Below are positions 2,586-63,018 of a DNA stretch of 64,000 bases, piece after piece. Position numbers and translations under genes: made by a program. The stretch is from NCBI GenBank assembly GCA_965202585.1, contig OZ241831.1:52948001-53012000 (forward strand), read 5' to 3'. The stretch is from Thalia democratica. Taxonomy: Eukaryota. The first letter of the stretch is position 1; each line of letters opens with the position of its first letter. The notes under the pieces are model-generated. The model had not been told where the DNA came from. It searched no databases and saw only the letters and a program-made list of their open reading frames with translations.

Positions 2586-4286
2586 TTATTCATCTAACTC
2601 AAATATAATTAGGTAGGCTGGAATTAAGTCCGAACGATTTCTTACACTACCGTAGTCGTTATTTCCAAATATACCTTCCCTTGTTACACTTTTCCTGCTA
2701 TCCTCGATAATGTTCTCCTTTTTCTGATCTTGATAGTTATCCTCTGAACAGACAACAAAAACAAATGACAACTTTTTTACTGTTTTATCAACTTCACAAT
2801 AATTACTACGACCAACATGTGTTGCTAAACTTAAATTTGTTGTAGTTTGTTGTAGTGCTGAGTTAAAAGTTTTTAGGCCGGTCTGATAATTAAGATAACC
2901 TTTTGTCAGAACATATTTTACTTCATTTGCTTTAACACCATTTAGATAAAGGTACTTTTTTTGAAAGTTAAGAACTTCATTTTTGTCAGTAGGGTTAATT
3001 CTAAACATATGTCTAATTTTTGGCATAACTTTAGCATTTTTGTTATTAAATGAACGCAAAATTAACTTGTAATCATCATTATCTTTATGTAGAAGTTCTG
3101 TACTAAATTTTCTTTTTTCGTCATATTTTGTCTCATAAATGCTGCTTAATTGAAAAGAAAGCTGTTCTATGTTTGAACTAGTATGACATTCTAATGCAGA
3201 TAAGAAACATTTAATTTTTGCTAGATAGTTTCTATTAATTTCCTTCTTTAGCTCTTCTGTTATCATTATAAAGGAATACTCGGATAATTCATTTAAAAGA
3301 TTATTTTTTTCGTTAGTTTTTCGATTTGTATTATAGTTGACAGCATTTTTTGCAAATCTTTTTATTTTTAAACAGTTGTAAAGTATTCTCTTAACTATGT
3401 CGTATACACTTGTTTTTTCTTCAATTTCAATTAAATAAGCAGGCACAACTAAATTATGGTGAGCTAATACTATGTTTTCGTGATTTATATTTTGAAATGA
3501 GCCTTTTAAAATTTTTCTTTTATGGCTATCATACATATCTAGCGAAACTGTTTCAGTTTTAGGAGATTTCTTAAACCAATTATTAAATATTTTTACTGAT
3601 GGATCATTATTTAGATAATCTTCAAAGGACATTTCTTGTGGAAATAGACTACCTTGTAGGCATATCTCAGGACTAGGTACACTGTTAACAAAAAAGTATC
3701 TAAAGTTTTTAATCTTTTTCTCTTCTGTAGCACAACACTTACCGTAATCATATGCATAACTAAAACTATCAGTAAGATAAACTCCAGGTCCATAAGACCC
3801 CTTTTTGGATGGATTAAATCCTGTTTTTAAGATTCCTGCAACATTTTGTGCTTTAGTTCCATGAAGTAGAAGAATTTGGTTAGAATCGCTTGACTCAGTT
3901 GAAATGTTGACGTTTGACACTACTCGGTATATTTTAAAGCTATTAGTTTTCTGTCTAAAATCTAATTGATTTCTAGAGTATTTTGTAGTAAAATTATCAT
4001 TAATTATTATCGAACTTTTTAGGAGTTCGTAATCTGGATCATTTGTTTTCAACAGCTCAAGTTTGTATTTAAAACCAGGAAGCACATATTTTTTGAAACT
4101 TGCAATATCATATTCACATAACTCTTTAGCATTTTCAAATACCATTCCTTTTTCGTAATCATTTTTTACTACATTTATTTCCTCTTCCGCTTTCCTAACA
4201 ATATTTTGTAGAAAATTTCTACAACCAGGGTGACTTTTTGAAAACTTTTCAACTTTATTTTTAATTGACTGCATTTTTAAATTCAT
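2586..4286 (-). CDS. Tandem ADP-ribosyltransferase (PARP-like catalytic domain + degenerate PARP-like domain), copy 1, intact, 566 aa
   Basis: Uninterrupted 566-aa ORF. Domain 1 (~aa 73-289) has LLLHGT (H142), GSYGPGVYLT (Y170), AYDY and ENIVLAHHNLVVPAYLIEI, matching the PARP/ARTD catalytic fold. Domain 2 (~aa 393-564) repeats the layout (ELLHKDNDDY..FRINP..LYLNGV..FVFVV..LIPAYLIIF) without catalytic motifs. Confidence 0.9.
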   Translation of the reverse strand: MNLKMQSIKNKVEKFSKSHPGCRNFLQNIVRKAEEEINVVKNDYEKGMVFENAKELCEYDIASFKKYVLPGFKYKLELLKTNDPDYELLKSSIIINDNFTTKYSRNQLDFRQKTNSFKIYRVVSNVNISTESSDSNQILLLHGTKAQNVAGILKTGFNPSKKGSYGPGVYLTDSFSYAYDYGKCCATEEKKIKNFRYFFVNSVPSPEICLQGSLFPQEMSFEDYLNNDPSVKIFNNWFKKSPKTETVSLDMYDSHKRKILKGSFQNINHENIVLAHHNLVVPAYLIEIEEKTSVYDIVKRILYNCLKIKRFAKNAVNYNTNRKTNEKNNLLNELSEYSFIMITEELKKEINRNYLAKIKCFLSALECHTSSNIEQLSFQLSSIYETKYDEKRKFSTELLHKDNDDYKLILRSFNNKNAKVMPKIRHMFRINPTDKNEVLNFQKKYLYLNGVKANEVKYVLTKGYLNYQTGLKTFNSALQQTTTNLSLATHVGRSNYCEVDKTVKKLSFVFVVCSEDNYQDQKKENIIEDSRKSVTREGIFGNNDYGSVRNRSDLIPAYLIIFELDE

Positions 4287-4301
4287 TTATTTGTTTAACA
4301 G

Positions 4302-4322
4302 CTATAAAATAATTTTAGTTAG
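4302..4322 (-). other. 3' splice acceptor (CTAAC branch point + ttttatAG) 15 nt upstream of copy 1 ATG
   Basis: The minus strand reads aaaCTAACtaaaattattttatAG|ctgttaaacaaataaATG. Equivalent acceptors occur at 26107, 41215 and 63034. Confidence 0.55.
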
Positions 4323-4447
4323 TTTTTAATTATACTTTTGCACCACTTGTTTTTATAAACAACTTCAATACAACTGATAGTTAGGTAAATTTAAAAGAAT
4401 TATTTCTGAGGCACAACAGTCAGAGAGTGGTTTGTCCTGGCTGAGTA

Positions 4448-4482
4448 CCTGATGCCAGATTACCAACAAGAAATTTTATATA
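4448..4482 (-). promoter_or_regulatory. Core promoter of ART copy 1: TATA box (TATAAAA from 4480) and Inr-like TCA with A at 4450
   Basis: TATA-to-Inr spacing is 30 nt. The same arrangement recurs in the other three copies with spacings of 30, 31 and 32 nt. Confidence 0.55.
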
Positions 4483-6664
4483 GGCTTTTAATTAAGTTGT
4501 GAAAACATTCTACGCCAAGAGGAAAATTCAAGATAAAATCAACGATTCTAAACATTTATAAAAAATGTCGTAGCTAACCATTACATTATACAGTTTTATA
4601 AATAAAAAACTCTAAAAAAAATGAAGTCTAAAGCTCTCTGGCTAATACATTTATAAAGTGACACTATTTCACAGTGAAGTAGTTGAAAAGCATTTTTTAT
4701 AAAAGTTTCCAAAAGTCACTTTCTTATTAAAAAAGTTGTAACATTCGATATTCAACCATATAAGTTCAAAATTTAAACTGTTAATATATCTTACAAATGT
4801 TTAAGCAATTAAACATTATATTTTCATTTCAAGCTTGAATACAAATATAATTAAAACTGATAATGAAATAAATAATAATCTTATTACATTAAAACAATTT
4901 TTTAAATAGATTTCTCACAGGAATTAGGGCATACAATGTAATAGGGTACTATTTTTCTAAGCTCTATATAAAAATTGTTTTCAAGAATTAATAATTATGT
5001 TATTAACTATTAAGATAAAATCAGCTGTGTAAAAATTTTTGTATGAAACACAGTTTTTACACTGGTATTTGTTTGGAAATTTCACAAAAAAGTACCACAA
5101 GGTTCTCCCTTTTTGCCTAAAATAAAAAGCACCTTGTGAAACAAAATACCCAGATTAAGTATTATTAAACTAGCCTGAATCAATTTAAGATTATGATAAA
5201 AATCAATAGCCTATATATTATGCAATCCTGTAATTACTACAAACTATTTATTTACTAAAAATTTTCATATAAACAAATTATAATAACAAAATAAAAAATT
5301 GTTAAAAAAAATATATGAGATAAACACTTAATTTCAAATAACAAGAACTAAAATAAAATATATGAAAACATTCAAAGGATAAGTTTTGCAATAACTACTA
5401 GAAAGAGTTTTACAAATCATCTGAAAAATTGTAGAACTATTCAAAGTTTTATAAAATTTTAAACCAGCTTGAGTCTATAACAGCACTTTATATTATAATT
5501 TATTAGTTTCTATCCTAATAAGAAAAGCTTTAAAAAAAAGTTATATTTATATTGTAATAAAAACTTAGTTTTATATGAAAAAAGTATTAAAAATTTAAAT
5601 AAAACAGTCTTTGAAATAAAAAAATTGTTTAATTTTTGAATTATAAATGATGCTTTTCTGTTATAAACCCAAAAAAGTTTCAATTAAAGAGGACATTTTA
5701 TACAATTCTAAAATTTTCATACCAATTTTTAAAATATCATTGGAAGATGAGTGGTCTGAACTTGAATATCAGTTACTGCAAAAGATATATTTAACATTAT
5801 ACTTGAACAGTGCTTTTTAAAGTACTTGTATACAAAAGTTTAAGCTTGTTTGAATAAAAATTCAGAATAAATAATCTATTTAAAGTTATAAAAAAGGATT
5901 CTTATCTTTTTAAGTTTAATCAAACGTTTTAAATGACAAAACTTGAAATTTTACTAGTATTCAAAGTTTCACCTATTTGAGTCAAAAAAGCTATCTCGAG
6001 TTGTTATTGAGCTTTTTTCAAATCTGATTATTTTCTAAACTTTTTAAATTCAAAAAAAAAAAAAACAAGTTCTTAAAATAAGTTGTTTACAAAACACAAA
6101 ATATTTAAATATAATCTCATAAACAATCTTGAAAAAAAACTATCTTCAGATTATAATAAAAAAAAAACATCTTCAGCTTCTTAAGAAATAAATATCGTAT
6201 GTCAGCCAGAGTTTTAAATATAAGACTAAAAGTATCCGGAAATATTGAAAAATTACAAAGTACTCTGATATATCCTGAGTGTATTGTGATCTTAAACATT
6301 TCCTTAGTTTTTATAAAATTAAGGCTTTTTAAAAATTTTATCAGTAAAAATTCAAACTAATTTTTTTGTAATTAAAAAAATCCTATTTTTTTAAATAGTT
6401 AACTAATTTTTTTTTGACTAATATTTTAGATTGAGATAATGAGATTATGCTATACTTAGCTAATGAAAGTTGAAAATCATTTTTGCTAAAATGAAAAAAT
6501 ATAAATACATCGTTTGAAATTATTTAATTTTGTTGAGGCGCCTATAAGTTTAGAAATTTTATGGTGAATTAATTTATAATGCTATTCTTAATAAGGTTAT
6601 TTTTATATAAAATAAAAAGACAACAAAAGTAACTGGTTTGAAAGCTGATTGAAATAACCATAGA

Positions 6665-14075: not shown

Positions 14076-16558
14076 TTAAAAGTGTATAAAATTAATCGAA
14101 ATATTTTTTGACAGTGCTTTAATTTAGTATAAAAAGTCCAGATTTCAAACAAAAAAAACAATAAAACCGATTTCAAACATAGTACTTGAATTGAAAAATT
14201 TAGTTGTTGAAGTAATAAAAATTCAGTGAAAAAACTAAATTAATGGCAATACAAAAATTAAACACATAAAAGTGTTTTGTACATTATTAATTATTCTTAT
14301 TAAATAATTGGAATACATTTTAAAGATATGTTCTTATTTTAAAATCGTTATTAAACAATAAAAATTAAATTGTCTTTAGTTCGCTTTAAATATATAAGAT
14401 TAATTATATTAAAATAGTGTCTTAAAATTAAATATAGTACTGTTAATAGCTTAGCTAGCTAGTAGATGATCAAGTTTGTTTTTTTAGTATAAACTTTTAT
14501 ACATTTTAAAGATAACTAAAACAACAAAATATAAGTTACTTAAACAAAAATTATTACAAACTAAAGTATAAAAATAGTATTTTTTTCATCATTTAAACAA
14601 AACTATAGTTAAAGTAAAGTTTTTACTTTTACGATTGTTTTCGTTATTTAAATAAATAACAGCTCCATAAATTTTAAATTTGTTATGAAATTTTAACTTT
14701 AAAATGATGAAACTAAATAAAGTAGAAAGCTTTATTTAGTACTTTAAGAATAATTATTGAGATAATCATATCATTTTAAATAAAATATTAAAATATTAAT
14801 AACACGTAACGTCGATAAAAGTACTAAAAATTATGTTAATATTATTACTGATTTACTGAAATAACATTTTTTAAACCTTAGTATAAACCTGCAATGATAG
14901 AAATAATGCTGAAATAAACAAATTGTTACATTTTTATATTTGAAATAAAACACTTTTTGTTTAATTTTAAAATAATGTTAAAAAACTTCTTAATTTGATT
15001 TTTAACTTAATTTGTTACTTAAACAGAAATAAAACATCATAAAAACAAGTTTAGTGACCTCTAATTTTGTAATACAGTGCAAACAGCTTATATAATCAGC
15101 ATTAAAACATATTGTAATCATTTTTAATTTTACTGAAAATAAATTACTTAATTACTTGCTTTATAAGTGTACATGTGTAGTGATATATTGGATAGTAACA
15201 ACTTGTATAGAATAACAAAAGCTACAAGTTTTACATAGAATTTGCTACATGAATGTTGCATTCAACGAAATAGCAACTTACTTATTTATTATACTTCGTA
15301 TTCAAAAATAAAACAATATAAAGTTAAAAAAACTAAGCGGTCGTTAGTCTTAATTTGTTTTTCAGTTTTGTTAAAATATACAATTAAAATTTGTCAATTT
15401 GTAGCAATGTTAATTTAATTAACATTTACCAGAAAAATTTGTTCGAAAGCTTAAAAAGGTTTATAGATTTATTTAACAGAGTATTTAGCTTTGCTAAAAA
15501 AGAGACTAAAAACACCAGGTTAAAAACAAGTGTATAAATGATAAGAACTTATAAAGAATAATCTTTAAACTTTTATAAATTTGATCCAAAATAGTAAAAT
15601 TCTTGTAGGAACTCTAAACTTTTATTAAAAAAAGTTATGTTATTTAAATATTCTAACAGTTTATACTTTTTTAAATAAACTAATTTTACTTCAAGCTTAT
15701 TTAACTATTCTAAACAACAAAAGCATTATGTTTAAATAAACTGTTTGTAGATAAACTTTTTTGATTTGTTTTTTATAACAGACAAATAATATAATTATTA
15801 TAAAAAAATCGCTTTTAATGTTTAACAAGTTTCAATTTAATCTTAAAATAATTTAAATTTCAATTTTTATCTTAATTTTAACTTTATCTCTTTCAATTCT
15901 TTTTCTTAATATATAGTTACTCACTGAAGTTTTATGAATTTTTGCCATTTTGTTGTCGATTGGTAAGTTAATTTTTACACAAGCCGTTTTGCATGATTTT
16001 TGATAGTTTCAAATTTAAGTCATAATCTATTTATGTTAAATTTCTTAACTTTCATTTGTGTGTATTGTTTTGTGCTTTATTTTAAACTTGTTTTGATGCT
16101 GATGAGTGCATAAACGCGAAACTCGAGTCCTTTGAGTTTTACATTTTGAAATATACCTTTTTATTAATAAAGCCCTTAAGGTAGGCTCAGTGTGAAAGAT
16201 TTGATTTATCAAGTTAAATAAATTAATTCTATATATTTATATATATACGTATATAAAAAAGAAAACATTAAATAGATAAAACTCAAAATAATTATTAGCT
16301 GTATATTGATAAATATTATCGAAATAGTTTTTTTTTTGTATTTAATAAATGTTTACTTTAAAGTTTCATTAAGAAAAATATTATTTTAAAATATGTCTAA
16401 AAAAGTAGTGGCAGCTAACTTTATTAACTTAAACATAAAATATTTTTCATATATTGTGTAGCCTACGATAACGTGTTTCTTTGAATAAAGTTAGGTTTAT
16501 TAAACATAATATTATTAATGTTAGATACATTAGTTTTCTCAGAAATTTTTTTAATAAT

Positions 16559-16762
16559 ATGGAAAGCAAACGAAAAACTCAAAAGATTGATAAAATCAAA
16601 CACCATCTTTCTGAGCAAAAAGCTGCTCATTGTAGGAGAAAAAATGTTAAAAAATTATTGACATTGGAGTTTAAAGAGTTGAATGAACTAATTAGATTGA
16701 GGAATGTTGTTGATCGGCAAATTATTAGTAGAAGTAAGCATTTTATGTCAACTATTTTATAA
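16559..16762 (+). pseudogene. Decayed bZIP-like coding remnant
   Basis: IKHHLSEQKAAHCRRKNVKKLLTLE aligns with bZIP basic regions such as CNC-type [26 protein letters not shown]. It has one codon missing between AA and C and has lost the invariant Asn. Confidence 0.4.
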
Positions 16763-16928
16763 TAATGAATTTTAAATTCTAACAATAATCTGCTTAATAA
16801 CCGACCTCTTCATGTAATTTTTAAACATCATATATTGCTGTTAATAAATAGTTTTATAAAAATTAATTTATTCTTAGTAAAAAGAAATAAAAGATAAAAA
16901 TTCATAGCAAAAATCTTAAATAGAGAGA

Positions 16929-17300
16929 ATGATATTACCAGTAAAACGATATTACAATCATTTGAAACTTTTACAAAACCAAAAGAAGACTGAATTAGAT
17001 CAAGTTCTTAACAAACAGAAGAATGAACTTGCTGAAAAGCTAGATTGTACAGACCACAATAAATACAAATGTTTAAATGAACAATTTACTGATGCGGTGC
17101 AACACTATGATGAACTTGAAATAATCGGAGATAAAATAAGTGACAAAGCAGTTATTAGTGGTAACAAAACTGAACTAAAAGCTTTTAAAAACAGTGTTGT
17201 GTGTACAATAGATTTAACAAAAGAAGAAACTACAATAAAATCATTACCAAAAGCTGTGAATAAAAACAAAAAGAAAGAACAAGCTTGTTTAGCAGGTTAA
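16929..17300 (+). pseudogene. 123-aa charged/coiled-coil ORF, probably the continuation of the bZIP-like remnant
   Basis: Protein-like composition (K/E/Q-rich, few hydrophobic runs), same strand and 170 nt downstream of the bZIP-like ORF. Further fragments occur at ~17610-17740. No family was recognised. Confidence 0.3.
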
Positions 17301-18311
17301 TAGAAATATGGACAGTGATTATCAAATGTTTTCTATTTTTATAACTGTTATGTTTAAAAAAATTGCAACTAGTTTATAAGAATTTTTTTGTGTTTAACTT
17401 TTTTACTATTTGTAACAAAACGTTACAAGCTCGTGAAACTTATATATTAAATATTAAAGCTCGTTATATTAAATTTTGCTTTAGACATAATAGTAGATTG
17501 TATTCTGTATTAATAGTAGTAGATAGTAGTTTTTCATTTTCACAAGTAACAATAAAGTTCTAACTAAAACTGAATGTAAAACTATAAAGTTATTATCAGA
17601 AAGAAAAAAATTACTGAAATGAAATCTGAATCAGAGTTGAAAAAAGCTGTTAAAATTGAAACCCAAAAGTTTTTTGATATATTTGTCTATTACTTTGAAA
17701 CAAATAGAATTTACTAAGATTTAGTTTTTATTAGTTTCTATTTGTTCTTGAGTGATCCTGATTACTTAAGAACGACTTTATAAAAATTTAAATTTTATCT
17801 TACTTATTTCAATATCAATTTGTTAAGTTTGATAAAATGGCGGAACAGAGGGCTTAGCAAACCTCAAACAAAATAAAAACTAACGTCTCACTTTCCTTAA
17901 TGACTAACGTTTATAATGGTAAAACTCATGGATTAATTAATTTTACAGAAACCAATTCACCTGAATACACAAAGCACCAACTTATTTATCTATATGTTTT
18001 CTTTGACAGTTTCGGATTTTATCTAACTTCTCTAGAAAGAAGTATCCTTGCTAAATTAACAAAACTTAATGAACATTTGGTCAGTCTTTTTGCTAAAATA
18101 AAGAAAATTGCTGTATAAAAGTTGTTTTTATGTTGTTACAAACTGTTTATATATATAATTTCACAATATACATTGATTTTTGCAAATAATAAGCTAAGAA
18201 TATACTAATAAATAGTATTTCAATTTTAAAAAACTTTTTATCAAGTATTTATCAGACTGAAAGTTATTATTTTGATCACCTATTTTAATGATTATAAGTA
18301 TATGATTTAAC

Positions 18312-20198
18312 GGGTGAGTGTCACTTTTGCACGACCGTCACTTTTTCACGAGCGTCACTTTAGCACGAGGAAACACTTTTGCACGGCGACACTTTTGCAC
18401 GCAGGGTCACTATTGCACGAGGGGACACTTTTCACGTCGAATCTTTTGCACGGTGGGTCACTTTTGCACGAGGGGACACTTTTGCATGGAGGGTCACTTT
18501 TGTACGAGGAGACACTTTTGCACGGCGGAATTTTTCACGATGACAATTTTTTACGGCAGCATTGTTGCACAACGTCACATTTTTACGATGAAATTATTGC
18601 ACAGCGACATTTTGGCTCGATGACTTTTTCGCACGGAAAATCAATTTTGCATGCAGGCCGATTAAAAGTTTTTTAGCTACTACCAAGTCTGTAACATAAA
18701 AAGAAACTGAAAACTAAAATTTTATAATATACCTATATTAAAGGCAAAAAATGAAAGGTCTAAAATCTTAAACAGTAAAAGTTAATGTTAGAAACTAACT
18801 AACGAAAAATTAGAATAAAATTATTTATAAAAGATTCATACCAGGGACAATAAAGTTAGTTTATTTAGAAACTAGGATAAAAAATACTTCAAATGTAAGT
18901 AAGTTGTTCTAGTTTATTTTGAATTTTAATATATTAATAAACAACTATGCCTTTTTATGTATTTTACTATACGGTTACAAGTTTATTGTTCATATGATGA
19001 ACCTAGGCATCAAAACCTAGACCACTTAAACTGAAAGACATATATATATAAAAGATAAAATATATACTTTATATATTATCACAAATATAAAATCATAATT
19101 TGATATAAAATTTATAGGTTTTCATAAAAAGCAAACTTTTAACCACAAACTTATATTGATTTACGATTTGGTGTAGAACGATCAACATCAAGTATTTAAA
19201 TGCATTGACTAATAACAAAAATAAACCCTTACGCTCCAAGGACATTAACGATATGCTCTCATCGGCTTATTTCATGATCATGGAATGCTGGTGTAAGCAT
19301 CTCTTGATTTTTCTTATGAACATAAGTTCAAACTTCCAAATGTTACTCTCTCATTGGCTTATCATGATCATGCAACATTATTGTTATGAAATAATCCAAG
19401 TTTAAACCATGAAAAATGCGCTATTTTATTGCTCTTTTTAGTCTCACGCTAAACTAAAAAACAAAAATAAACAACAAGTAAAATCTGAAATACCTTTGCA
19501 CTTCATAAACTAAGTAAATCTTTGTTTTTAATTTAATTATTGTTTGAAATTTAATTAAATTTAAAATATTTATTCAACAACTATATAATGCTAATTATAA
19601 CATTTAGAGAAAACAAGTAAAAAATAATACTCAAAAGTTCTAAAGCCTTACTAAACTAATTTTATTTTCCTGTTTGAATAGTAACAAAATTCAGATTATT
19701 TTCAATTAATATATTCAAAACTGTTTTTATTTAAAATTAAAAATTTGTATTCATCTAGTTTATTTAATATAAGCTAAAATATATAAATTAATGAACTGTG
19801 GTACGTTATTATATTGTTCTACGTAAAATTTCAAACAAAGTCTTTGCTTTAAATTTTCATTAAAAAACTACCACATTTTATGTATTCAAAACAACTTAAG
19901 TTTAAAAGCGAATATTATTCAAAAAAAAAAATATTTAAATAAAAATGTCGCCGTGCAAAAGTGTCTCCTCGTGCAAAAGTGTCACCTCGTGCAAAAGTGA
20001 CGCCGTGCAAAAATTACCCTGCGTGCAAAAGTGATGCCGTGCAAAAGTGTCCCATCGTGCTAAAGTGACGCTCGTGCAAAAGAGTCGCTGTGCAAAAGTG
20101 TCTCCTCGTGCAAAAGTGACCCTTCGTGCAAAAGTGACCTTCGTGCAAAAGTGTCCCCTCGTGCAAAAGTGACGCTCGTGCAAAAGTGACCCGTTCCA
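18312..20198. mobile_element. 1.9-kb foldback-type element with long inverted ttttgcacga arrays and an 8-bp TSD (gatttaac)
   Basis: Left array 18312-~18660, right inverted array ~19945-20198 ending gtgacccgttcca. Flanks 18304-18311 and 20199-20206 are both gatttaac. Confidence 0.8.
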
Positions 20199-24394: not shown

Positions 24395-26090
24395 CTATTC
24401 ATCGAACTTAAATACAATAAGGTAGGCTGGAATTAAATTCAAACGATTTTTTACAACTCCATTCTCCAAATTACCAAATATTCCTTCTCTTGTTACACTT
24501 TTCCTGCTATCCTCAATAACTTTATCATGTTTCTGATCTTCATATTTTTCTTTTGAACAGACAACAAATACAAATGACAACTTTTTTACTATGTTATCAA
24601 CTTCACAATAACTACGACCAACACGTGTTGCGAAATCCAAGTTGGTGGCAGTTTGATGTAGTGCAGGGTCAAATTTTTTCGGGCTGTTTAGATAATTAGG
24701 ATAACCATTTGTCAGAACATATTTTACTTTGTTCACTTTAACTCCGTGAAGATAAAGGTACTTTTGTTTGAAGTTGAGAACTTCATTTTTGTCAGTAGGG
24801 TTAATTCTGAACAGTTGTTTAATTTTTGGCAAGTTTTCAGTATTTTTATTACCAATTGAACGTAAAATAAACTTGTAATCATCATCTTTATTATGTAGAA
24901 GTTCTGTAGTAAATTTTCTTTTTTCGCCTTGTTTTATCTCATAAATGCTGCTTAGTTTACAAAAAAAGTTGTTTCATGATTAAATCAATGTCATTTTCTA
25001 ACGTTGTGGTGAGATAATCAATTTTTGCATAATAATTTCTTTTTATTTCCTTTTTTAAATGTTCTGCTATCATTGTGAAGGAAAATTTTGAAACTTTATT
25101 TTTAGAATTATCTTCTTTGTTTGTTATCTTATTTAAACTAGAATCAGCAGCACTTGTATACCTTACTTTTTTTAAGCAACTATAAAGTATTCCATCAACT
25201 ATATCACCTATATGAGTTTTTTCTTCAATTTCGATCAAATAAGCAGGCACTACTAAACTATGGTGAGCTAATGCTATGCTTTCTTTATCAACTTTTTGAA
25301 ATGAACCTTTTAAAAGTTTTCTGTTATAACCATTATGTACGTCTAATTGAGATTCTTCAGTGTTTAAGGGTTTACCTAGACTTTTGCTGTACATTTTTAT
25401 TGATGGCTCTTCATTAAGATAATCTTTGAAAGATGAATTTATTTGATACTGATTATATCCTCGACATATCTCAGGATTAGGTACACTGTTGACAAAAAAG
25501 TGTCTAAAATTTTTGGTTAAATTTTTTTCTGTAGCACAGGACTTACTGTAATCATATGCATAAGTAAATCTATTTGTAAGATACACTCCAGGTCCATAAG
25601 ATCCTTTTTCGGATGGTTTAAATCCAGTTTTTAAAATTCCTTCTACGTTTTGTGCACTAGTCCCATGAAGCAAAAGTATCTGGTTAGAATCGCTTGACTC
25701 TGTTGAAATGTTGTCGTTTGATACTACTCTGTATATTTTCAAATCTTCAATCTTACGTCTTATGTCTAGTTGATTACTAGAGTACTTTGTAGTAGTTTCA
25801 TCTTTAAATTTTACTGAATTTTCTAGGAGACTGTAGTCTGGATCGTTGGTTTTTAATAGCTCGAGTTTGTATTTAAAACCAGGAAGTACTGATTTTTTGA
25901 AATTTGCAACATCATATTTACACGACTCTTTTGCTTTTTCAAACAAGAATCCATTTTCGTAAATATTTTTTTCTTTACTTATTTCTTCGTTCGCTTTCAT
26001 AACGATATCTTGTAGAAAGTTTCTACAGTCAGGGTGACTTTTAGAAAACCTTTCCACTTTGCTTTTAATTAACTTCATTGTTAGTTCCAT
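24395..26090 (-). pseudogene. Tandem ART/pseudo-ART gene copy 2, with a +1 frameshift in a T7 run at ~24961-24967 (real truncation or assembly error)
   Basis: The 377-aa ORF (24957-26090) carries the complete catalytic domain (LLLHGT, GSYGPGVYLT, ESIALAHHSLVVPAY). The next frame resumes KLSSIYEIK.. and reaches the same C-terminus as copy 1 (stop 24395). Removing one T restores LFCKLSSIY, matching LSFQLSSIY in copy 1. Confidence 0.85.
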
Positions 26091-26106
26091 TTTATTTGTT
26101 AGAAAA

Positions 26107-40600: not shown

Positions 40601-40904
40601 AAATTTCTTAAATTTAAAGTTTTTTAAGGTTTTTTTGCCTAAACTATTAAATTAAAGATTTTTCCAGGATTCAAGGTTTTTTGGCAAACGTGCTTTAGAT
40701 ATAAGAAGTTATAATGAAAATAAACAAATTATTTTACTATAACAATAAAACCAAAATGAAGAAAGCAAGACATGACAAAAAGGGATCATTTTTTTGTGCA
40801 TGAATTTTGCAATTTTGTTTCATGAAACAAAAGTATTTTTGAGTTACTAGAACTGCTTAACTCTTTCGAAGTTTTTTTATTTGGGAAAACTCTTCAAATA
40901 AAAT

Positions 40905-41196
40905 GTTGTCTTTTTTAACTGAATTTTCTAGAAGGTTATAGTCTAGATCGTTGTTTTTCAAAATCTCCAGATTGTGTTTAAAACCAGGAAGAGCAGGTTT
41001 TTTAAAATTTTGCAACATAATATTCACAAAACTTATTAGCTTTTTCTAGCACCACTCCTTTTTCGTAATCATCTTTTTCTTTATTTATTTCCTTTTCTTT
41101 TTTCTTAACAAAATTTTGCAGAAAGCTTCTACAGTTAGGGTGGCGCTTTGAATATATTACAATTTTATTTATTTTGGATTGCATTGTTAGATTTGT
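40905..41196 (-). pseudogene. Truncated 5' fragment of the ART gene (copy 3)
   Basis: MQSKINK..SKRHPNCRSFLQN..YEKG..CEY then, after a frameshift, LPGFKHNLEILKNNDLDYNLLENSV. The first ATG codon is changed to ACA. Homology ends before the HGT motif. Confidence 0.9.
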
Positions 41197-47639: not shown

Positions 47640-47642
<3 letters not shown>

Positions 47643-47685: not shown

Positions 47686-47691
<6 letters not shown>

Positions 47692-53405: not shown

Positions 53406-53418
53406 ATACTTGTTGAAA

Positions 53419-55164
53419 TAGTGTAGTGTTGCAACTTAATGTGATGTGATAGTTGTAGTGTTGCAATTTTTTTTGATGTGATAGTTGTATTGTTGCAGCT
53501 TACTGTGGTATGATAGTTGTAGTGTTTTAACTTAATGTGATTTGATAGTTGTAGTGTTTCAGTTTACTGTGAAGTGATAGTTGTAGTGTAGTAACTTAAT
53601 GTGATGTGATAGTTGTAGTGTTGCAGATTACTGTAATGTGATAGTTGTATTGTTGCAATCTACTGTAACGTGATAATTATAGTGTTGCAACTTAATGTGA
53701 TGTGATAGTTGTAGTGTTGTAACTTAATTTGATGTGATAATTGTAGTGTTACAACTTACTTTTATATCATAGTTGTATTGTTGCAGCTTACTGTGATATG
53801 ATAGTTGTAGTGTTTTAACTTAATGTGATTTGATAGTTGTAGTGTTTCAGTTTACTGTGATGTGATAGTTGTAGTGTTGCAGCTTACTGTAATGTGATAG
53901 TTGTAGTGTTGCAACTTACTGTTATGTCATAGTTGTATTGTTGCAGCTTACTGTGATATGATAGTTGTAGTGTTTTAACTTAATGTGATTTGATAGTTGT
54001 AGTGTTTCAGTTTACTGTGATGTGATAGTTGTAGTGTTGCAAACTACTGTGATGTGATAGTTGTATTGTTGCAGCTTACTGTGATGTGATAGTTGTACTG
54101 TTGCAAACTACTGTGATGTGATAGTTGTATTGTTTCAGCTTATTGTGATGTGATAGTTGTAGTGTTGCAATCTACTGTGAAGTGATAGTTGTATTGTTAC
54201 AAACTACTATGATGTGATAGTTGTATTGGTGCAGCTTACTGTGATGTGATAGTTGTAGTGTTTCGACTTACTGTAATGTGATAATTGTATTTTTGCAATC
54301 AACTGTAACGTAATAGTTATAGTGTTGCAACTTAATGTGATGTGATAGTTGTAGTGTTGTTACTTAATGTGATTTGATAGTTGTAGTGTTGCAACTTGCT
54401 GTGATGTGATAGTTATATTGTTGCAGCTTACTGTGATATGATAGTTGTAGTGTTTTAACTCAATGTGATTTGATAGTTGTAGTGTTTCAGTTTACTGTGA
54501 TGTGATAGTTGTAGTGTTGCAACTTACTGTAATGTGATAGTTGTATTGTTGCAATTAACTGTAACGTGATAGTTATAGTGTTGCAACTTAATGTGATTTG
54601 ATAGTTGTAGTGTTGTAACTTAATGTGATGTGATAGATGTAGTGTTTCAGTTTACTGTTATGTGATATTTGTAGTGTTGCAACTTATTGTGATTTGATAG
54701 TTGTAGTGATTTAACTCAATGTGATGTGATAGTTGTAGTGTTTCAGCTTACTGTAATGTGATAGTTGTTTTGTTGCAGTTTACTGTGATGTGATAGTTGT
54801 AGTGTTGCAACTTACTGTTATGTTGTAGTTGTAGTGTTTTAACTTGTTGTGATGTGATAGTTGTAATGTTGTAACTTAATGTGATGTGATAGTTGTAGTG
54901 TTGTAACTTGTTGTGATGTGATAGTTGTAGTGTTGTAACTTAATGTGATTTGATAGTTGTAGTGTTTCAGTTTACTGTGATGTGATAGTTGTATTGTTGC
55001 AATTTATTGTGATGTGATAGTTGTATTGTTACAGCTTACTGTGATATGATAGTTGTAGTGTTTTAACTTAATGTGATTTGATAGTTTTAGTGTTTCAGAT
55101 TACTGTGATGTGATAGTTGTAGTGTTGCAATCTACTGTAACGTGATAGTTATAGTGTTGCAACT
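53419..55164 (+). repeat. 32-bp minisatellite, ~54 copies, consensus gtgatgtgatagttgtagtgttgcagcttact
   Basis: Regular 32-nt periodicity. Variant patterns recur at 160-nt spacing (agttgtattgttgcagcttactgtgatatg at 53771 and 53931). Confidence 0.95.
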
Positions 55165-56938
55165 TTAGTTATAACTTTAAAATTTTTTAAGTTTAAAATT
55201 ATAAGTTTTTCGAAAATTATTAATGCTTTAAGCACTTACTTACGCTAATAATGTCACAAATTGTTTTTAGGCTGCAGCATTGATTTGATGAAGCTAGATA
55301 ATTCCATACTTCCTGTAAAAAAATTACCATAATAAATTTTTTTTAATAATTATAGCTTCAAAGGAACTTCTATAAAACAAAAGTGCTATTAACATTCGAG
55401 ATCACACTGAAAATAAAATCATCATGACCATACTGTTTTTTTACCTATCACTGCTTTGAAAACTCTATAACACATATTAACACATATTTACTGTTAATAG
55501 AATGCATTTTTTAATTTGGTTAAAAATATATAATAACTAAGACTTTTTATTGTTACTTATTTTAGCTGTTTATAATTTAACTAAACCTGAAATGAAACTT
55601 AATTTATAAAGCAACATTAAAACATACATTTTTATTTGATTTTACTTAAACTTTAAGTTACATAATTTATGCTCTTCAAACAGAAAAACATCATTAAATA
55701 TTTTTTATTTCATCTTTTTTATTTTTTTTAATTTATCAACGGTTGCAAAGAAAAGTTTTAGGTTTATGAACTGAATGTTCGGCGTTAAGAGTTCTCAATA
55801 AATTGAAAGAAATGTTCAGTAAATTTAAACATAAGTAAAGGTTTTGTTTGTTTAAACTACTATTAAACAAAACAGAAGTTAATTACAATTTAAATGAGAA
55901 GAAAATGAGGTTAAGGTTTAAAAAATAAATCAGAATGAGAATCTTGAAATCTTGATCAAATAAACCATAATTAATATATATAGACAATTTTTTTTATATA
56001 ATTTTATTTATCACAACCCTTTCTTTACAAATTTAGCGTTTTTTAATTAAAATTCATAAAAGCTTCTTTATTCACAAAAATTATAAACTTACTAACTTTA
56101 AAAAAACACTTAACTAGTTACGAATAAAAAATACTTTTCTAAATAAAAAATGTTTGTGCAAGTTATTTGATAAAAATAACGAGGTTATAAAAATCTTGTT
56201 AAGGAAAATCTTATCTAAAGCATATAAAACTTTTTATCCAATTAACAAAATAAAAGGCAAAATTTATTTAGATATAATACAAAAGTTATACAACAAATTA
56301 CATCTAATAATGTCTAATAACAAAAAAATTTATATAAAATCTATAACTTTTATTTGAAGTATCAAAAATGTTTTAACAGTTTACAAAAGTCAAAAAGCAA
56401 AATTTAGTCAGACTTTGCTTTTAATATAGATAATTAACAAACTAAGCGAAACTCATATAAAAATACCTGATTTGCAAGCTAAAATATTTGTAAATAATTA
56501 ATCTAACCAAAAATTGTAAATTAATCTGCTATTTGTAGGTTATTTTACAACTATAAGACTATATTACAAAAACAACTAGAAACATTTAATCGTAGCAACT
56601 TTTACTGAAACACAAAGTTAAGTTAAGCCAGAATAAGTTATAAATACAAGTTTAAAAAACAAAGCAAAATCTATGTAAAAGTTCAGCATTGTATACTAAC
56701 AAAACTAAAATTTGTAATATATCCTATAAGCATTAATATCTAGTCGCTAAAAAAGTAATCAATAACATCTAATGTTTCTGAAAACAAATACAAATTGAAT
56801 TCTTATCACAATTAGCATTCAATAAACAAAGTACACAAATAATTTTGAATATTGGAAATAGTTCACTTTTTACAACTATAATATTAATATTTTTTGAATA
56901 AGCCTAATATAAATAACAAACAAAATTGATCAAAAGCA

Positions 56939-59430: not shown

Positions 59431-61316
59431 CTATAGTAACTAAACTCAATTTAACAGTATCATTGGTAAATAACAAACAATAAAAAAAGAGTATGTGTGA
59501 GTTAACATTATTTTACAATTGTACAAAGTTTGTAATTTACTTTAAATATGTAAATTACAATTTTTAGATGATAAAATTTATGAAATTAATTTTTTATGAA
59601 ACTACAAGTTGTTCTCAACTGTGGTATCATTTTCAAATACCAACAATAAAACTAATACTTTAAAATAAGCTATTTGTTATACTATATAAATCAAATAACT
59701 TTTATTAGATTACAATTTATGACTATAAGTACAAAGATAAGTAATAAAAACTCAGTTCAAGTCCCAAATTTTAAACATATTTTTAAATTAATAGTTTTTA
59801 TATATTAAATAATATAGAGTTAGTTTAAGTATGTAGATAATATTTAAAATTTTTAAGAGATTACTGCTTCGGGTTTTTAGTAGTGATCGCGGAGATTTGT
59901 TTAATAAATAAGTATGTAACACCAAGTCATATCATCGTAAATATAAGGTAAACCAAATAGAAAGGTCAATTAAAAAGAAGATCAAATTATAGATTTCAGC
60001 TTCAGTTTTTAAAAGGTTTGTATGTAAATATAAATAAATTTTAAGAAGAAAAGCACTAATTAAAGTATTTACGTAGATCCATCACTAGCGGCGCTTATTA
60101 AAATTAGATCTTTAAGTGCACCGATTATATGCTTTTCAGCTTGATGTTCACAGAATTTAATTAGCTTGACAACTTGTCTAACTTATTAAAAAATACTAAA
60201 TTAACTTGTTTAAACTGTTTAAAAAGTATTATTATAAGTACAATTATTAAAAATACTATAAAAGTCACTTAATAAAAGCATAAATTTTAATTGTTTTGGA
60301 CATACTATTTATTTTAACGCTACAAGTTATGATCATATCATATTTACCATTAGATCAATTAGTAGATTGATGCCATAGCTTGGTTCTCATAAAATATTTT
60401 CGTTTAGTCGTAACTATAGATAGCTGTAATGGTTATTATACAAACATTGGTAATTTCTATTAAGAAAATTTTACATACATTGGTCTTATTAGTGAAACCT
60501 ATCTATTCAACTGCTGCGCAAAGTAAATTAATTATTAAGACATCTGATGCACTTGCAGTGTGATGAGATCAAATATAAAACGTCTCTTTAAGTCTAACGA
60601 GCTGAAACCTATTTTTTATACAATCTAATGGGAGCATGTTTGAAAACATGAACCGATGATTCCAAACTTATCGAGCTTTTAAAAAAATTTCATTTTTTGC
60701 ATTAAAGTGTATAAATATAATATAAGTGTTATTTCGCATTAAAATTTTAACTGTAATTCTGATCCACCAATATCTTAGTAAAATAATAAACGGATCTAGT
60801 TAGATTCCAATTTGTAGATCCGGTAAATCACAACTAAATGTAAGCTTTTCTAGCTAAATTTTTAACTAAAATCCAACTAATTTACAATAAAGATAAAATC
60901 AATCTCATTACATTTTACTAAATTACATAAAATAAACAAATTACAACATATATAATACTTTTTATATTTATTACTTTATGTCAATTAGTATAAAAATCAA
61001 AAATTCTGAAGTAGTAAGTAAACAATTATTCAAAGCATTTTAGGACTTTAAACTTTACTACAAAAAATAAGCATCAATCTATTTAACCTAAGAAATTATT
61101 TTGTTCACAAAAAGCTTTATAAAAAGGAAAAAAAAATAGTTCATCGTAACACATAACATACAACAAGGTAAAATATGTCTGATAATTTGTTAAAAATAAC
61201 AAATTTTATTAGATAAGGTTTTCAGAATAAGTTTTATAAAAAACTAGAAGAACCAAAAATATTGACCAGTAAGCATACTTCGACAGAAAAAATTTACGAA
61301 TATCTTTGTTTTTTAC

Positions 61317-63018
61317 TTATACTTCGTCTAACTCAAATACAATCAGGTAGGCTGGAACTAAACCAGATGGATTTTCTACATATCCATTATTACCAAAGAA
61401 TCTTTCTCTTGTTACACTACCTCTGCTGTCTTTGATCAATTCGCTATCTTTTTGGTTTAATTTTTTATAGTTTTCTTTTGAACGTAGAACAAATACAACC
61501 GATAACTTTTTTACAGTGTTATCTACTTCACAATAATTATGAACACTACTAAGTGCTGTACTTAAGTCAGTTGTAGGGTCATATAGTATTATATCAATAT
61601 CATCTAGGTCATTCTGTTCTTCAGGATAACCATTTGTAAGTATATACTTTATATTTTTTACTGAAACTCCATTAAGATAAAGATACTTTTCTTTAAATTC
61701 ATAAAATTTATTTGTGTCAAAAGGGTTGATTCTAAACAACTGCCTTATTTTTGGCAAATTTCCAGGATTTTTATTATCAAATGAACTCAAAATAACTTTG
61801 TAATCATCATTATTCTTATCAAAAAGCTCAGTACTAAATTTTCTTTTTTCGTCATCTTTGAGTTTTATTGTACTGCTTAACTTAAAGGAAAGTTGATCCA
61901 TATAATAAGTTAAAACTTTTTCTAACATAGGAGTAATTAAATCAATTTTTCCAAGATGAATTGCTTTAATTTCTTTCTCGAATTCTTCTGCTAACATTGT
62001 AAAGGAAAACTCTGAATTTTCTTTATGAGTACTGTTTTCTTTGTTTATATTCTGATTTATCGTAGAAATAACATTGCCTTTTCTATAACTTCTTATCTTC
62101 AAAATGCTATAAAGTGTTTCACTAACTATATCGTCTACATTAGTTTTTTCTTCAATTTCTATTAAATAAGCTGGTACTACTAAACTATGGTGGGCCAACG
62201 CTATCTTTTCTTGGTCAATGTTTTGAAATGAACCATTCAAAATTTTTCTGTTATGACTATCAAACAACTCAAACAACAATTCTTCAAATTTTAGAGGTTT
62301 TTCTAAGCTTTTGTTAAATATTTTTATAAATTGACTATTTCTTAAATACTCTTGAAAAGATATATTAAATTCACGCTCATTATATGGTAGTTGTTTTTCA
62401 GGGTTTGGTACACTATTAACAAAAATGTATCGAAACTTTTTAATCGAATTTCCTTCTGTTGCGAAACACATACCGTAATTATAAGCATATTTAAAACTAT
62501 TAGTTAGATACACTTCAGGTCCATAAGACCCTTTTTGAGATGGATTAAATCCGGTCTGTAGGATTCCTTTAATATTTGGTGCTTTTGTTCCGTGAAGCAA
62601 AAGTATCTGATTAGAATCATTCGAGTCTGTTGAACTATTTTCGATTGATACTACTCTGTATATTTTTAAACCTTTAATTTTTTGTCTGATGTCTAGTTGT
62701 GATCTAGAGTTTTTCAAATTATCGTTAAATTTTATTGAACTTTGAAGATTTTCGTAGTCTGGATCATAGGTTTTTAACAGCTCAAGTTTATACATAAAAC
62801 CTAAAAGAACAAACTTTTTGATATTTGCAACATCATATTCACAAGATTTTCTTTTTTTTTTCTTGCTTAAACATCAACTCCTTTTCGTAAGCATTTTTTT
62901 CTTCTTTTATTTCCTCTTCCGCTTTTATAACAGTATCTTGTAGAAAATCTTTACTGTTAGGGTGACTTTTTGAAAACTCTTCCAGTTTATTTTTAATGGA
63001 CTGCATCGTTAGTTTCAT
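61317..63018 (-). pseudogene. Tandem ART/pseudo-ART gene copy 4, with a 5' frameshift (~62845-62885) and a downstream 492-aa ORF carrying both domains
   Basis: The ATG at 63018 gives MKLTMQSIKNKLEEFSKSHP.. and hits TGA at 62839-62841. The segment is 7 nt longer than in copy 1, within an A-rich run. The next frame gives CEYDVANIKKFVLLGFMYKLELL.. to the stop at 61317. LLLHGT is intact but the motif reads GPEVY instead of GPGVY. Confidence 0.85.

What the first reader, a model, noticed from the sequence alone, without database searches (positions are those of the whole stretch)
2586..63018. Birth-and-death tandem array of intronless double-ART (PARP + pseudo-PARP) genes: candidate invertebrate innate-immune effector family
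Seen: four same-strand paralogs with ATG sites at 4286, 26090, ~41190 and 63018. One is intact, two are frameshifted and one is truncated. Each is carried in a multi-kb duplicated unit, and the CDSs have no introns and none of the WWE, macro, BRCT, WGR or ankyrin domains of canonical PARPs. Known: ARTD/PARP enzymes such as PARP9/14/15 and PARP13/ZAP act in antiviral defence, and immune effector families typically evolve as tandem arrays with turnover. Inference: this is a lineage-specific expanded ART family, possibly an NAD-consuming or ADP-ribosylating defence system. I do not recognise it as a named gene.
Basis: partly seen in the sequence, partly recalled or inferred. Interest (0 to 1): 0.8.

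Follow-up and report, generated by a model that had tools for sequence, protein, structure and literature searches.

The report
Huge array of double-PARP genes
This marine animal's genome carries at least 77 copies, packed into 3.4 million bases of one chromosome, of an unnamed gene whose protein joins a seemingly working ADP-ribose-transferring (PARP-type) unit to a worn-out copy of itself; it may be a defence or stress family, but no activity or expression data exist.

Summary
The window has four minus-strand paralogues: one intact (566 aa), two frameshifted, one truncated. One frameshift is a single extra T in a T7 run and could be an assembly error. Each protein has two PARP-fold modules. 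ART1 passes Pfam PARP. ART2 has no Pfam hit, but profile comparison (E 9e-19) and fold search (Z 12.7) show it is a degenerate copy.

There are at least 77 copies, about 68 of them on contig C7 between 51.08 and 54.50 Mb, and 50 of 70 fetched copies are intact. The same genome has at least 150 PARP-domain loci overall.

Each gene has its own TATA/Inr promoter and a splice acceptor 16-25 nt before the ATG. No transposon features were found.

His, Gly, Thr and Tyr of the NAD pocket are invariant in all 50 intact copies. The third triad position varies. dN/dS is about 0.4-0.5, with a fast-evolving patch in ART2.

All relatives are unnamed marine-metagenome proteins. Fish Gig2 is the closest described analogue.

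A defence role is plausible but untested, because no RNA data could be obtained. This scan had already noted PARP-like arrays elsewhere in this genome.

The parts
2586..4286 (-). Copy 1: intact single-exon CDS, 566 aa plus stop
   Evidence: ORF list, translation, Pfam PARP E 8e-12. Aligns end to end with relatives, for example P0004 at 100% coverage.
4116..4286 (-). Copy 1 N-terminal helical region, aa 1-57 (three helices, pLDDT about 90)
   Evidence: AF2 model m41ccf6a41fbf. Lowest dN/dS of the protein, about 0.27.
3411..4109 (-). Copy 1 ART1, aa 60-292: PARP-type ADP-ribosyltransferase fold with H142-G-T, G168, Y170 and Y181. The third triad position is E270 in this copy.
   Evidence: Pfam PF00644 over aa 117-287. 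VIA Z 16.2 to PARP3 and 15.8 to PARP1 over aa 59-292. H, G, T, G and Y are invariant in 50/50 intact copies.
3132..3410 (-). Copy 1 inter-module linker, aa 293-385, with a disordered stretch (aa 315-332) and a long helix (aa 339-376)
   Evidence: AF2 secondary structure. dN/dS about 0.55.
2589..3131 (-). Copy 1 ART2, aa 386-566: degenerate PARP fold. N449-G-V replaces H-G-T, and the G-x-G-x-Y motif is lost.
   Evidence: hhalign of ART1 against ART2: probability 99.1%, E 8.8e-19. No Pfam hit. The ART2-only model matches PARP3 (Z 12.7), PARP1 (12.4), PARP13 (10.3) and the TASOR pseudo-PARP (8.4). dN/dS 0.40.
2787..2876 (-). Fast-evolving patch in ART2, aa 471-500. It corresponds to the lost nicotinamide-pocket segment of ART1.
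   Evidence: pN/pS is 1.04-1.36 in 20-aa windows across 21 independent sister pairs. Fisher OR 1.97, p 1.5e-4 against the rest of the gene.
4302..4482 (-). Copy 1 core promoter and leader: TATA 4476-4482, Inr-like ATCAGGTA 4446-4453, branch point CTAAC 4318-4322, acceptor TTTTATAG 4302-4309
   Evidence: Conserved across diverged paralogues and in Tara contig L072. The A of TCAG lies 31 nt from the first T of the TATA box.
2121..5867 (-). Duplicated unit around copy 1
   Evidence: 76% identical to 23919-27698 over 3.85 kb.
24398..26090 (-). Copy 2: full length, with one +1 frameshift in a T7 run (inside 24948-24973). Promoter intact: TATA 26281-26287, Inr 26253-26260, acceptor 26107-26113.
   Evidence: tblastn, nucleotide alignment, promoter scan.
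40804..41193 (-). Copy 3: 5' fragment (aa 2-148, 42% identity) with no ATG. The downstream sequence (40522-40788) resembles 28621-28886.
   Evidence: tblastn, self-BLAST, upstream sequence.
61323..63018 (-). Copy 4: full length with a 7-nt insertion (inside 62850-62875) that shifts the frame after aa ~50. A 492-aa ORF remains (61317-62795). The TATA box is degraded.

Best explanation
Shown:
- These are ordinary nuclear genes of the host, not transposon cargo. They encode a lineage-restricted, unnamed two-module PARP-like protein.
- Module 1 is an N-terminal helical region plus ART1. It keeps a complete NAD-binding signature (H-G-T, G-x-G-x-Y, Y).
- Module 2 is a long helix plus ART2. It is an ancient internal duplicate that kept the PARP fold but lost the His and Tyr.
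- The family grew by tandem and multi-gene block duplication into an array of at least 77 genes on one chromosome. It turns over by birth and death: about 70% of copies are intact and the rest carry stops, frameshifts or truncations.
- Each copy has its own TATA/Inr promoter and a 3' splice acceptor just before the ATG.

Inferred:
- The proteins are cytosolic. No signal peptide or membrane segment is evident by eye in the hydrophilic N-terminus and none is annotated by Pfam; no predictor was run.
- ART1 binds NAD+ and mono-ADP-ribosylates targets or itself. Paralogues differ at the third catalytic position (E, G, Q, K or D).
- ART2 acts as a non-catalytic recognition or regulatory module, and its former active-site surface diversifies between paralogues.
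- The most likely biological role is in a conflict or stress response such as antiviral defence, by analogy with antiviral vertebrate PARPs and the fish Gig2 family.
For: Copies and array: (50 of 70 fetched copies have ORFs of at least 540 aa).

Block duplications: the pairs L029-L001 and L030-L003, and L012-L011 and L010-L009, recur in the same order about 1 Mb apart.

Fold and internal duplication.

NAD-pocket residues: H142, G143, T144, G168 and Y170 are invariant in 50/50 intact paralogues, although overall amino-acid identity to copy 1 falls to 52%. The NAD core, aa 141-200, has a depleted N/S ratio (OR 0.55, p 5e-5).

Selection: NG86 dN/dS is 0.42 overall, 0.40 in ART1 and 0.40 in ART2, so the pseudo-domain is maintained. 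The ART2 patch at aa 471-500 has pN/pS up to 1.36.

Promoter and acceptor: conserved in paralogues, in the dispersed C1 copy and in a relative's contig.

Not viral, not a prokaryotic family, not a transposon:
- no IMG/VR relatives;
- no PADLOC or NCBIfam hit;
- no transposon domains among 18 of the window's other ORFs of 59 aa or more; the only hit is a ZFAND2-like zinc finger.

Analogy: the Gig2 family is PARP-like, virus- and IFN-induced and lineage-specifically expanded, and some members have 2 or 4 tandem units (PMC3617106).
Against: - There is no expression evidence.
- No activity is shown.
- Ser904 of PARP1 is replaced by a near-invariant Ala178 (alignment).
- The catalytic Glu position is not conserved: E in 18/50 copies. 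Its assignment rests on motif and strand register, not on a residue-level superposition.
- dN/dS below 1 overall does not prove an arms race. The ART2 hot spot could reflect relaxed constraint.
- No formal site-model test was possible.
- Macro-domain erasers are not co-expanded, with about 15 loci.
- Some near-identical pairs, such as L010/L012 with dS 0.006, could be uncollapsed haplotypes.
Confidence: 0.5

Rival explanations
1. The biochemistry is the same (a mono-ART with a pseudo-ART partner domain), but the role is not pathogen defence. It could be a proteotoxic or heat-stress response, or a reproductive or developmental function with high dosage demand.
For: Two heat-shock-element-like trimers (aTCnnGAAnnTTC, 8/9 core bases) sit about 81 and 62 nt upstream of the Inr in many promoters. 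A score of at least 7 occurs in 92% of promoters against 25% of background windows. A ZFAND2-like AN1 zinc-finger ORF is co-amplified 7 times inside the array. Overall selection is purifying.
Against: The promoters are homologous, so the HSE enrichment is not independent evidence. No perfect HSE was found. The ZFAND2-like gene has no HSE within 500 nt upstream. High paralogue diversity, common pseudogenes and a diversifying patch are not typical of dosage amplification, which tends to keep copies alike.
Confidence: 0.2
2. The proteins are not enzymes. ART1 serves as an NAD+ or ADP-ribose binding sensor or scaffold, as in pseudo-PARPs such as PARP13, TASOR or RCD1/SRO.
For: The third catalytic residue is not conserved: E18, G11, Q11, K6, D3, I1. 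The Ser904 equivalent is Ala. ART2 is clearly a pseudo-PARP and matches PARP13 and TASOR.
Against: Known mono-ART PARPs also lack the Glu (established knowledge of PARP6-8, 10-12 and 14-16). The absolute conservation of H-G-T and G-x-G-x-Y in ART1 contrasts with their loss in ART2 of the same protein, so loss is tolerated where activity is not needed.
Confidence: 0.12
3. The array is a selfish system, such as a toxin-antidote or drive element or a transposon-borne ORF family, and not a host-beneficial family.
For: Very high copy number. A few dispersed copies lie on C1, C6, C14 and on small contigs. ART domains are common toxins in conflict systems (established knowledge; PMC3482391 was listed but not read).
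Against: About 88% of scored copies lie in one 3.4-Mb array with conserved local gene order. Homology between subfamilies covers only the promoter and the CDS and ends at the stop codon. No terminal repeats were found around the units in the window self-BLAST, and no transposase, RT or integrase ORF was found. The dispersed C1 copy carries the family promoter, so it is a DNA-level duplicate and not a retrocopy. No partner 'antidote' gene is consistently linked.
Confidence: 0.08
4. The array is largely non-functional, decaying DNA, or is inflated by assembly artefacts.
For: About 30% of copies are broken. Some pairs are nearly identical. One frameshift in the window sits in a homopolymer.
Against: Fifty intact ORFs of 544-590 aa exist in a 25% GC genome where random ORFs are short: only 13 ORFs of at least 90 aa occur in 64 kb, 4 of them PARP pieces. 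dN/dS is about 0.4 and the catalytic motifs are invariant. Orthologous clades occur in other species' metagenome contigs.
Confidence: 0.03

Closest known systems
Fish Gig2 (GCRV-induced gene 2) family
   Same: Small proteins weakly similar to the PARP catalytic domain, with no other known domain. Lineage- and species-specific expansion by duplication. Some members consist of 2 or 4 tandem units. Distant relatives were reported from 'marine water samples' (PMC3617106).
   Different: Gig2 tandem units are highly similar to each other, whereas here unit 2 is old and degenerate. The Gig2 unit has its own C-terminal domain. Sequence homology to this family was not shown: no named Gig2 appears among hits at E <= 1e-5. 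Gig2 is known to be virus- and IFN-induced, and nothing is known about expression here.
Vertebrate mono-ART PARPs of the antiviral group (PARP7, 9-15) and PARP3/PARP1 catalytic domains
   Same: The same ART fold with H-Y-x motifs. The best structural matches are PARP3 and PARP1 (Z about 16), and sequence-profile matches reach PARP1, 3, 4, 14 and 15.
   Different: No macro, WWE, zinc-finger, WGR or BRCT domain, and no helical regulatory (PARP_reg) domain by Pfam. Only 12-19% identity. Two ART folds in one chain. No one-to-one orthology.
Pseudo-PARP domains (PARP13/ZAP C-terminus, TASOR, plant RCD1/SRO)
   Same: ART2 has the PARP fold without the NAD-binding His and Tyr, and it matches these structures (Z 10.3, 8.4 and 7.4-7.7).
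   Different: Those pseudo-PARPs are fused to RNA-binding or other domains, not to an apparently active PARP domain of the same origin.
Binary actin-ADP-ribosylating toxins (iota Ia, C2I, VIP2)
   Same: From established knowledge: two tandem ART folds that arose by duplication, one active and one degenerate adaptor domain.
   Different: They belong to the R-S-E clade, not the H-Y-E clade. They are bacterial and secreted, and the domain order is opposite (inactive N-terminal, active C-terminal). No sequence relationship was tested or expected.

Membership tests
PARP / ARTD (H-Y-E clade ADP-ribosyltransferases, Pfam PF00644) | Match to PF00644 above the gathering score | tested here: met
   ART1 scores 45.5-46.1 bits against a cut-off of 26.7. 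ART2 has no hit.
PARP / ARTD (H-Y-E clade ADP-ribosyltransferases, Pfam PF00644) | PARP-type ART fold | tested here: met
   ART1: Z 16.2, rmsd 3.4, 190 aligned residues to PARP3. ART2: Z 12.7, rmsd 3.4, 159 aligned residues. The top 17 of 48,161 chains are all PARP domains.
PARP / ARTD (H-Y-E clade ADP-ribosyltransferases, Pfam PF00644) | NAD-binding His and Tyr of the triad (H-G-[ST], G-x-G-x-Y) | tested here: met
   H142, G143, T144, G168 and Y170 are invariant in 50/50 intact genome copies. HMMER aligns them to PARP1 H862 and Y896. In ART2 they are replaced (N449 in 36/50) or lost.
PARP / ARTD (H-Y-E clade ADP-ribosyltransferases, Pfam PF00644) | Third triad residue (Glu for poly-ARTs; I, L, T or Y for mono-ARTs) | tested here: inconclusive
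   The position was assigned by motif and strand register (Y284 to PARP1 Y1001; strand 271-275), not by superposition. Residue 270 is E18, G11, Q11, K6, D3, I1, and residue 271 is N, S or K.
PARP / ARTD (H-Y-E clade ADP-ribosyltransferases, Pfam PF00644) | NAD+-dependent ADP-ribosyl transfer | not testable with these tools
   Needs recombinant protein.
Canonical multi-domain PARP subfamilies (PARP1-3, tankyrase, macro-PARPs, CCCH/WWE PARPs, PARP16) | Accessory domains (WGR, BRCT, PARP_reg, ankyrin, macro, WWE, zinc fingers, ARTD15_N) and one-to-one orthology | tested here: not met
   No such Pfam domain at E <= 1. All close relatives are unnamed metagenome proteins.
Fish Gig2 family | Gig2-specific C-terminal domain and sequence homology to Gig2 | not tested
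   No tool gave me a Gig2 sequence. No named Gig2 protein was among the hits. This is an analogy only (PMC3617106).
Fish Gig2 family | Induction by virus or interferon | not testable with these tools
   No RNA runs hold the gene.
Birth-and-death multigene families (typical of immune effectors) | Tandem array, mixed intact and broken copies, species-specific clades alongside older subfamilies | tested here: met
   At least 77 copies, about 68 of them within C7 51.08-54.50 Mb. 26 of 77 have internal stops, and 50 of 70 are intact. Metagenome orthologues P0001-4, P0006 and P0007 nest among the genome clades.
Birth-and-death multigene families (typical of immune effectors) | Diversifying selection on a recognition surface | tested here: inconclusive
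   pN/pS is 1.0-1.36 at aa 471-500, enriched over the rest of the gene (p 1.5e-4) but not shown to exceed 1 significantly.
Transposon-encoded ORF family | Terminal repeats or TSDs, linked transposase/RT/integrase, dispersed insertion pattern | tested here: not met
   Homology between subfamilies is limited to the promoter plus the CDS. No transposon domains were found in 18 of the window's other ORFs of 59 aa or more that were scanned. Copies are clustered, not dispersed. Each copy has its own TATA/Inr promoter.

The most novel reading that the evidence does not exclude
This animal lineage has built a large innate-immune repertoire on the PARP fold: hundreds of stand-alone, double and fused ART genes. 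In the double-ART family the degenerate ART2 would be a rapidly diversifying sensor or decoy, for example for pathogen factors that target or reverse ADP-ribosylation. It would gate the NAD-dependent activity of ART1. That would be an ADP-ribosylation-based counterpart of the NLR and TRIM expansions of other animals.
Probability: 0.15. Interest if true: 0.85.

Novelty: new variant of a known kind. Interest (0 to 1): 0.6.

Why it matters
PARP-type enzymes are known to act in virus-host conflict, but animals usually have one or two dozen of them. Here a single genome holds at least 150 PARP-domain loci above the Pfam cut-off, out of 851 first-look candidates. One sub-family of at least 77 genes has an undescribed active-plus-degenerate double-ART build.

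If these genes respond to infection or stress, they would show that ADP-ribosylation can be the basis of a diversified effector repertoire outside vertebrates. The natural series of H-Y-E, G, Q, K and D paralogues would also be useful for studying how the third catalytic residue and a fused pseudo-domain tune PARP activity.

If they turn out to be silent, this remains a clear case of birth-and-death evolution of an unannotated family known only from marine metagenomes.

Tried and rejected
- Expression: two run searches found only low-coverage DNA-like runs of the same organism, a related organism and marine metagenomes, with no RNA.
As a result, the T7 frameshift of copy 2 and the transcript ends stay unchecked.
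I used independent sister pairs instead.
- Viral origin: no relatives in IMG/VR.
- Prokaryotic defence or other prokaryotic families: none in PADLOC or NCBIfam.
- PARP16-like N-terminal domain, a lead from the Atlas: no Pfam ARTD15_N hit, and PARP3 and PARP1 score better than PARP16 in fold searches.
- Tunicate test through GH6 (PF01341): no hit, but the control also failed, so it is uninformative.
- A Logan contig of a relative (L097) was inspected for a spliced leader or a poly(A) tail. Neither was evident.
- One contig look-up failed for lack of a free slot.
- HSE link to the co-amplified ZFAND2-like gene: no HSE lies upstream of it.
- Literature searches found no report of proteins with tandem PARP catalytic domains and no report of PARP expansions of this size.

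Full report
**1. What is in the window**

The window is 25% GC eukaryotic DNA. It lies at C7:52,948,001-53,012,000 of an 802-Mb assembly.

A tblastn of the 566-aa ORF at 2589-4286 (minus strand) against the window finds four copies on the same strand:
- Copy 1 is intact.
- Copy 2 (24398-26090) changes frame once.
- Copy 3 (40804-41193) covers only aa 2-148.
- Copy 4 (61323-63018) changes frame near aa 52-57.

The copy 2 shift is a single extra T in a T7 run. The copy 4 shift is a 7-nt insertion. Multi-kb units around copies 1, 2 and 4 are 73-76% identical.

**2. The protein**

- Pfam finds only the PARP catalytic domain, in aa 117-287 (E about 1e-11). It finds nothing in the C-terminal half.
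- Pairwise BLASTP between the halves is marginal (E 0.055).
- A profile-profile comparison built from 44 family members aligns aa 70-290 with aa 390-566 at 99.1% probability, E 8.8e-19.
- An AlphaFold2 model (pLDDT 80.5, pTM 0.71) places aa 59-292 on PARP3 and PARP1 catalytic domains (Z 16.2 and 15.8; Swiss-Prot models).
- A separate model of aa 335-566 (pLDDT 84.5) was searched against 48,161 PDB representatives. It returns only PARP domains at the top: PARP3 (Z 12.7), PARP1 (12.4), PARP16 (11.6), PARP13 (10.3), TASOR pseudo-PARP (8.4) and RCD1/SRO (about 7.5). The next, unrelated hit drops to Z 5.9.

The 'PARP plus pseudo-PARP' reading is therefore correct. Each ART fold is preceded by helices: aa 1-57 before ART1 and a long helix at aa 339-376 before ART2.

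**3. Catalytic residues**

In 50 intact genome paralogues, H142, G143, T144, G168 and Y170 of ART1 never vary. HMMER aligns them with the PARP1 H862-G-S and G-x-G-I-Y896 motifs.

The Ser904 equivalent is a near-invariant Ala178, and Y181 matches Y907.

I placed the third triad position at residue 270 by register. The steps were P282-x-Y284-L-I against PARP1 K-Y1001-L-L, strand 271-275 against strand 988-992, and one extra residue in the turn. This is an inference, not a superposition. Residue 270 is E in 18 copies (including copy 1), G in 11, Q in 11, K in 6, D in 3 and I in 1.

In ART2 the His position is N in 36 of 50 copies, and H in a minority of distant relatives (10 of 44 in alignment A1). 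The G-x-G-x-Y segment is gone.

**4. Family size and organisation**

Searching the whole assembly with copy 1 scored 77 matches out of 1,163 first-look candidates. About 68 of them lie on C7 between 51.08 and 54.50 Mb. The rest are on C1, C6, C14 and small contigs. The frameshifted copy 2 of the window is absent from that list, so 77 is a lower bound.

Of 70 loci fetched, 50 carry an intact ORF of 544-590 aa. By my count, 26 of the 77 matches have internal stops.

Orientation is mixed between 51.08 and 52.43 Mb, including four plus-strand genes followed by four minus-strand genes. It is uniformly minus from 52.78 to 54.50 Mb, with a spacing of about 10-25 kb.

A maximum-likelihood tree shows many well-supported subfamilies. 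The same neighbouring pairs of subfamilies recur about 1 Mb apart:
- L029-L001 at 52.94-52.95 Mb and L030-L003 at 54.14-54.17 Mb.
- L012-L011 at 52.90-52.91 Mb and L010-L009 at 53.80-53.82 Mb.

This means multi-gene blocks were duplicated as well as single genes.

**5. Not a transposon, and not strictly intronless**

Between subfamilies, homology covers about 430 bp upstream plus the CDS and stops at the stop codon.

The upstream block contains these elements:
- a TATA box;
- an Inr-like ATCAGGTA whose A lies 31 nt from the first T of the TATA box;
- about 130-150 nt further on, a CTAAC branch point, a pyrimidine run and an AG, 16-25 nt before the ATG.

The same layout occurs in the dispersed C1 copy and in a 63%-identical gene on a Tara Oceans contig. 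This fits a pol II gene whose leader is removed, either by spliced-leader trans-splicing or as a 5'-UTR intron. Other readers of this genome noted acceptors 17-19 nt before ATGs elsewhere. I could not verify either option.

Eighteen of the window's other ORFs of 59 aa or more were scanned. None shows transposase, RT or integrase domains, and the only domain hit is a ZFAND2-like AN1 zinc finger.

**6. Selection**

Pairwise NG86 dN/dS for pairs with dS between 0.05 and 1:

| Region | dN/dS |
|---|---|
| Whole protein | 0.42 |
| N-terminal helices | 0.27 |
| ART1 | 0.40 |
| Linker | 0.55 |
| ART2 | 0.40 |

The pseudo-domain is as constrained as the active one.

Using 21 phylogenetically independent sister pairs:
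- pN/pS peaks at 1.04-1.36 over aa 471-500 of ART2, the segment that corresponds to the lost nicotinamide pocket (Fisher OR 1.97, p 1.5e-4 against the rest of the gene);
- it reaches 0.95 over aa 201-220 of ART1 (p 0.02);
- the NAD core (aa 141-200) and the last strand (aa 271-290) are depleted (p 5e-5 and 1e-4).

This is compatible with diversifying selection on a surface of ART2, but it does not prove it.

**7. Relatives**

Two word-based searches and one exhaustive HMM search found only unnamed metagenome or SRA-assembly proteins. There are 108 50%-identity clusters at E <= 1e-30 and 334 at E <= 1e-10.

The contigs inspected came from Tara Oceans marine samples. They are 25-29% GC and gene-poor around the ORF.

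P0001 is 49-64% identical to every genome copy, and P0193 is at most 47% identical, so these come from other, related organisms. P0002 nests inside a genome subfamily on a very short branch.

**8. The wider genome**

A scan with PF00644 scored 150 loci, all above the Pfam cut-off, out of 851 candidates. They lie in many clusters on most large contigs. Most of the double-ART array is not among those 150, because its scores fall near the bottom of the list.

The other loci sampled include:
- stand-alone ART ORFs of 210-250 aa, related to ART1 (E 1e-24 to 1e-29);
- three more diverged double-ART genes on C1 and C2;
- ORFs with the PARP domain at the C-terminus, one with a PARP_reg-like stretch;
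- an ORF of more than 1,343 aa that starts with an ART.

Macro domains number only about 15 loci. An earlier agent of this scan had already described one of the minimal-PARP clusters.

**9. Comparison with what is known**

Literature searches found no description of a protein with two PARP catalytic folds of this kind. They also found no animal with PARP expansions of this size.

The closest described case is the fish Gig2 family. It consists of PARP-like proteins that are induced by virus and interferon. It has expanded lineage-specifically, some members are built of two or four tandem units, and it has distant relatives in 'marine water samples' (PMC3617106). I could not test homology to Gig2.

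By fold, ART2 belongs with the pseudo-PARPs (PARP13, TASOR, RCD1/SRO). By logic, the active-plus-degenerate pair recalls the two-ART-fold binary toxins, but that comparison rests on my own knowledge only.

**10. Verdict**

Structure, duplication history, gene autonomy and selective maintenance are well supported. Enzymatic activity is a reasonable inference from the invariant NAD-pocket residues. A defence role is a hypothesis that fits the evolutionary pattern and the Gig2 and PARP precedents, but it has no direct support here. A stress-response role is a live alternative, hinted at by HSE-like promoter elements.

Noticed in passing
window 36917-37243 (-): A 108-aa ORF with AN1 and ZFAND2-type C2H2 zinc fingers (Pfam E 3e-16 and 6e-9). 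Seven copies at 90-100% identity lie inside the same C7 array, all on the PARP strand, so it was co-amplified with the PARP blocks. More distant matches lie on C6 and C5.
   Followed up: partly
whole genome (G000), e.g. C1:0.6-1.7 Mb, C2:90-98 Mb, C5:79.4-80.3 Mb, C7:39.5-39.6 Mb: The PARP catalytic domain is hugely expanded genome-wide. 150 loci scored above the Pfam cut-off, out of 851 candidates. Most are single-ORF genes of 210-290 aa arranged in clusters, and there are further double-ART genes (L081, L090, L092) and an ART-led ORF of more than 1,343 aa (L083).
   Followed up: partly
window 4522-4534 and about 19 nt downstream; same positions in most paralogue promoters: Two heat-shock-element-like trimers (aTCnnGAAnnTTC and cTCnnGAAnnTTC, up to 8/9 core bases) lie about 81 and 62 nt upstream of the Inr-like motif. 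They are conserved as part of the promoter block, so this is only a lead for stress induction.
   Followed up: partly
window 53418-55165, and 35048-35305 in the opposite orientation: A 32-bp satellite with 54.7 copies at 82% match. It causes the strong GC skew at 54-56 kb. A short 8-copy array of the same unit lies inverted 18 kb away.
   Followed up: no
window 18316-18613 and 19941-20192: Two arrays of 17-18-bp repeats (GTCACTTTTGCACGAGG-like) in inverted orientation, about 1.3 kb apart. They sit next to a run of plus-strand ORFs (16481-18118) with no Pfam hit. This may be a DNA transposon or a MITE-like element.
   Followed up: no
L093:9025-10908 versus L094:8328-10211 (Tara Oceans contigs of a related organism): The same double-ART locus was assembled from two samples and is 99.6% identical over 12 kb. 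Within the gene the two differ by two C-to-T changes, one of which creates a stop at codon 330, between ART1 and ART2. This may be a segregating loss-of-function allele.
   Followed up: partly
G000:C7:51.08-51.77 Mb: The 552-aa subfamily (L041-L049) is arranged as four plus-strand genes followed by four minus-strand genes. This suggests a large inverted duplication at one end of the array.
   Followed up: no
downstream of stop codons in several paralogues, e.g. L006, L017, L018: A conserved GGTAAGT ... TTCCTAG pair about 30 nt apart lies 40-70 nt after the stop codon. It looks like a splice donor and acceptor but is very short for an intron, and it remains unexplained.
   Followed up: no
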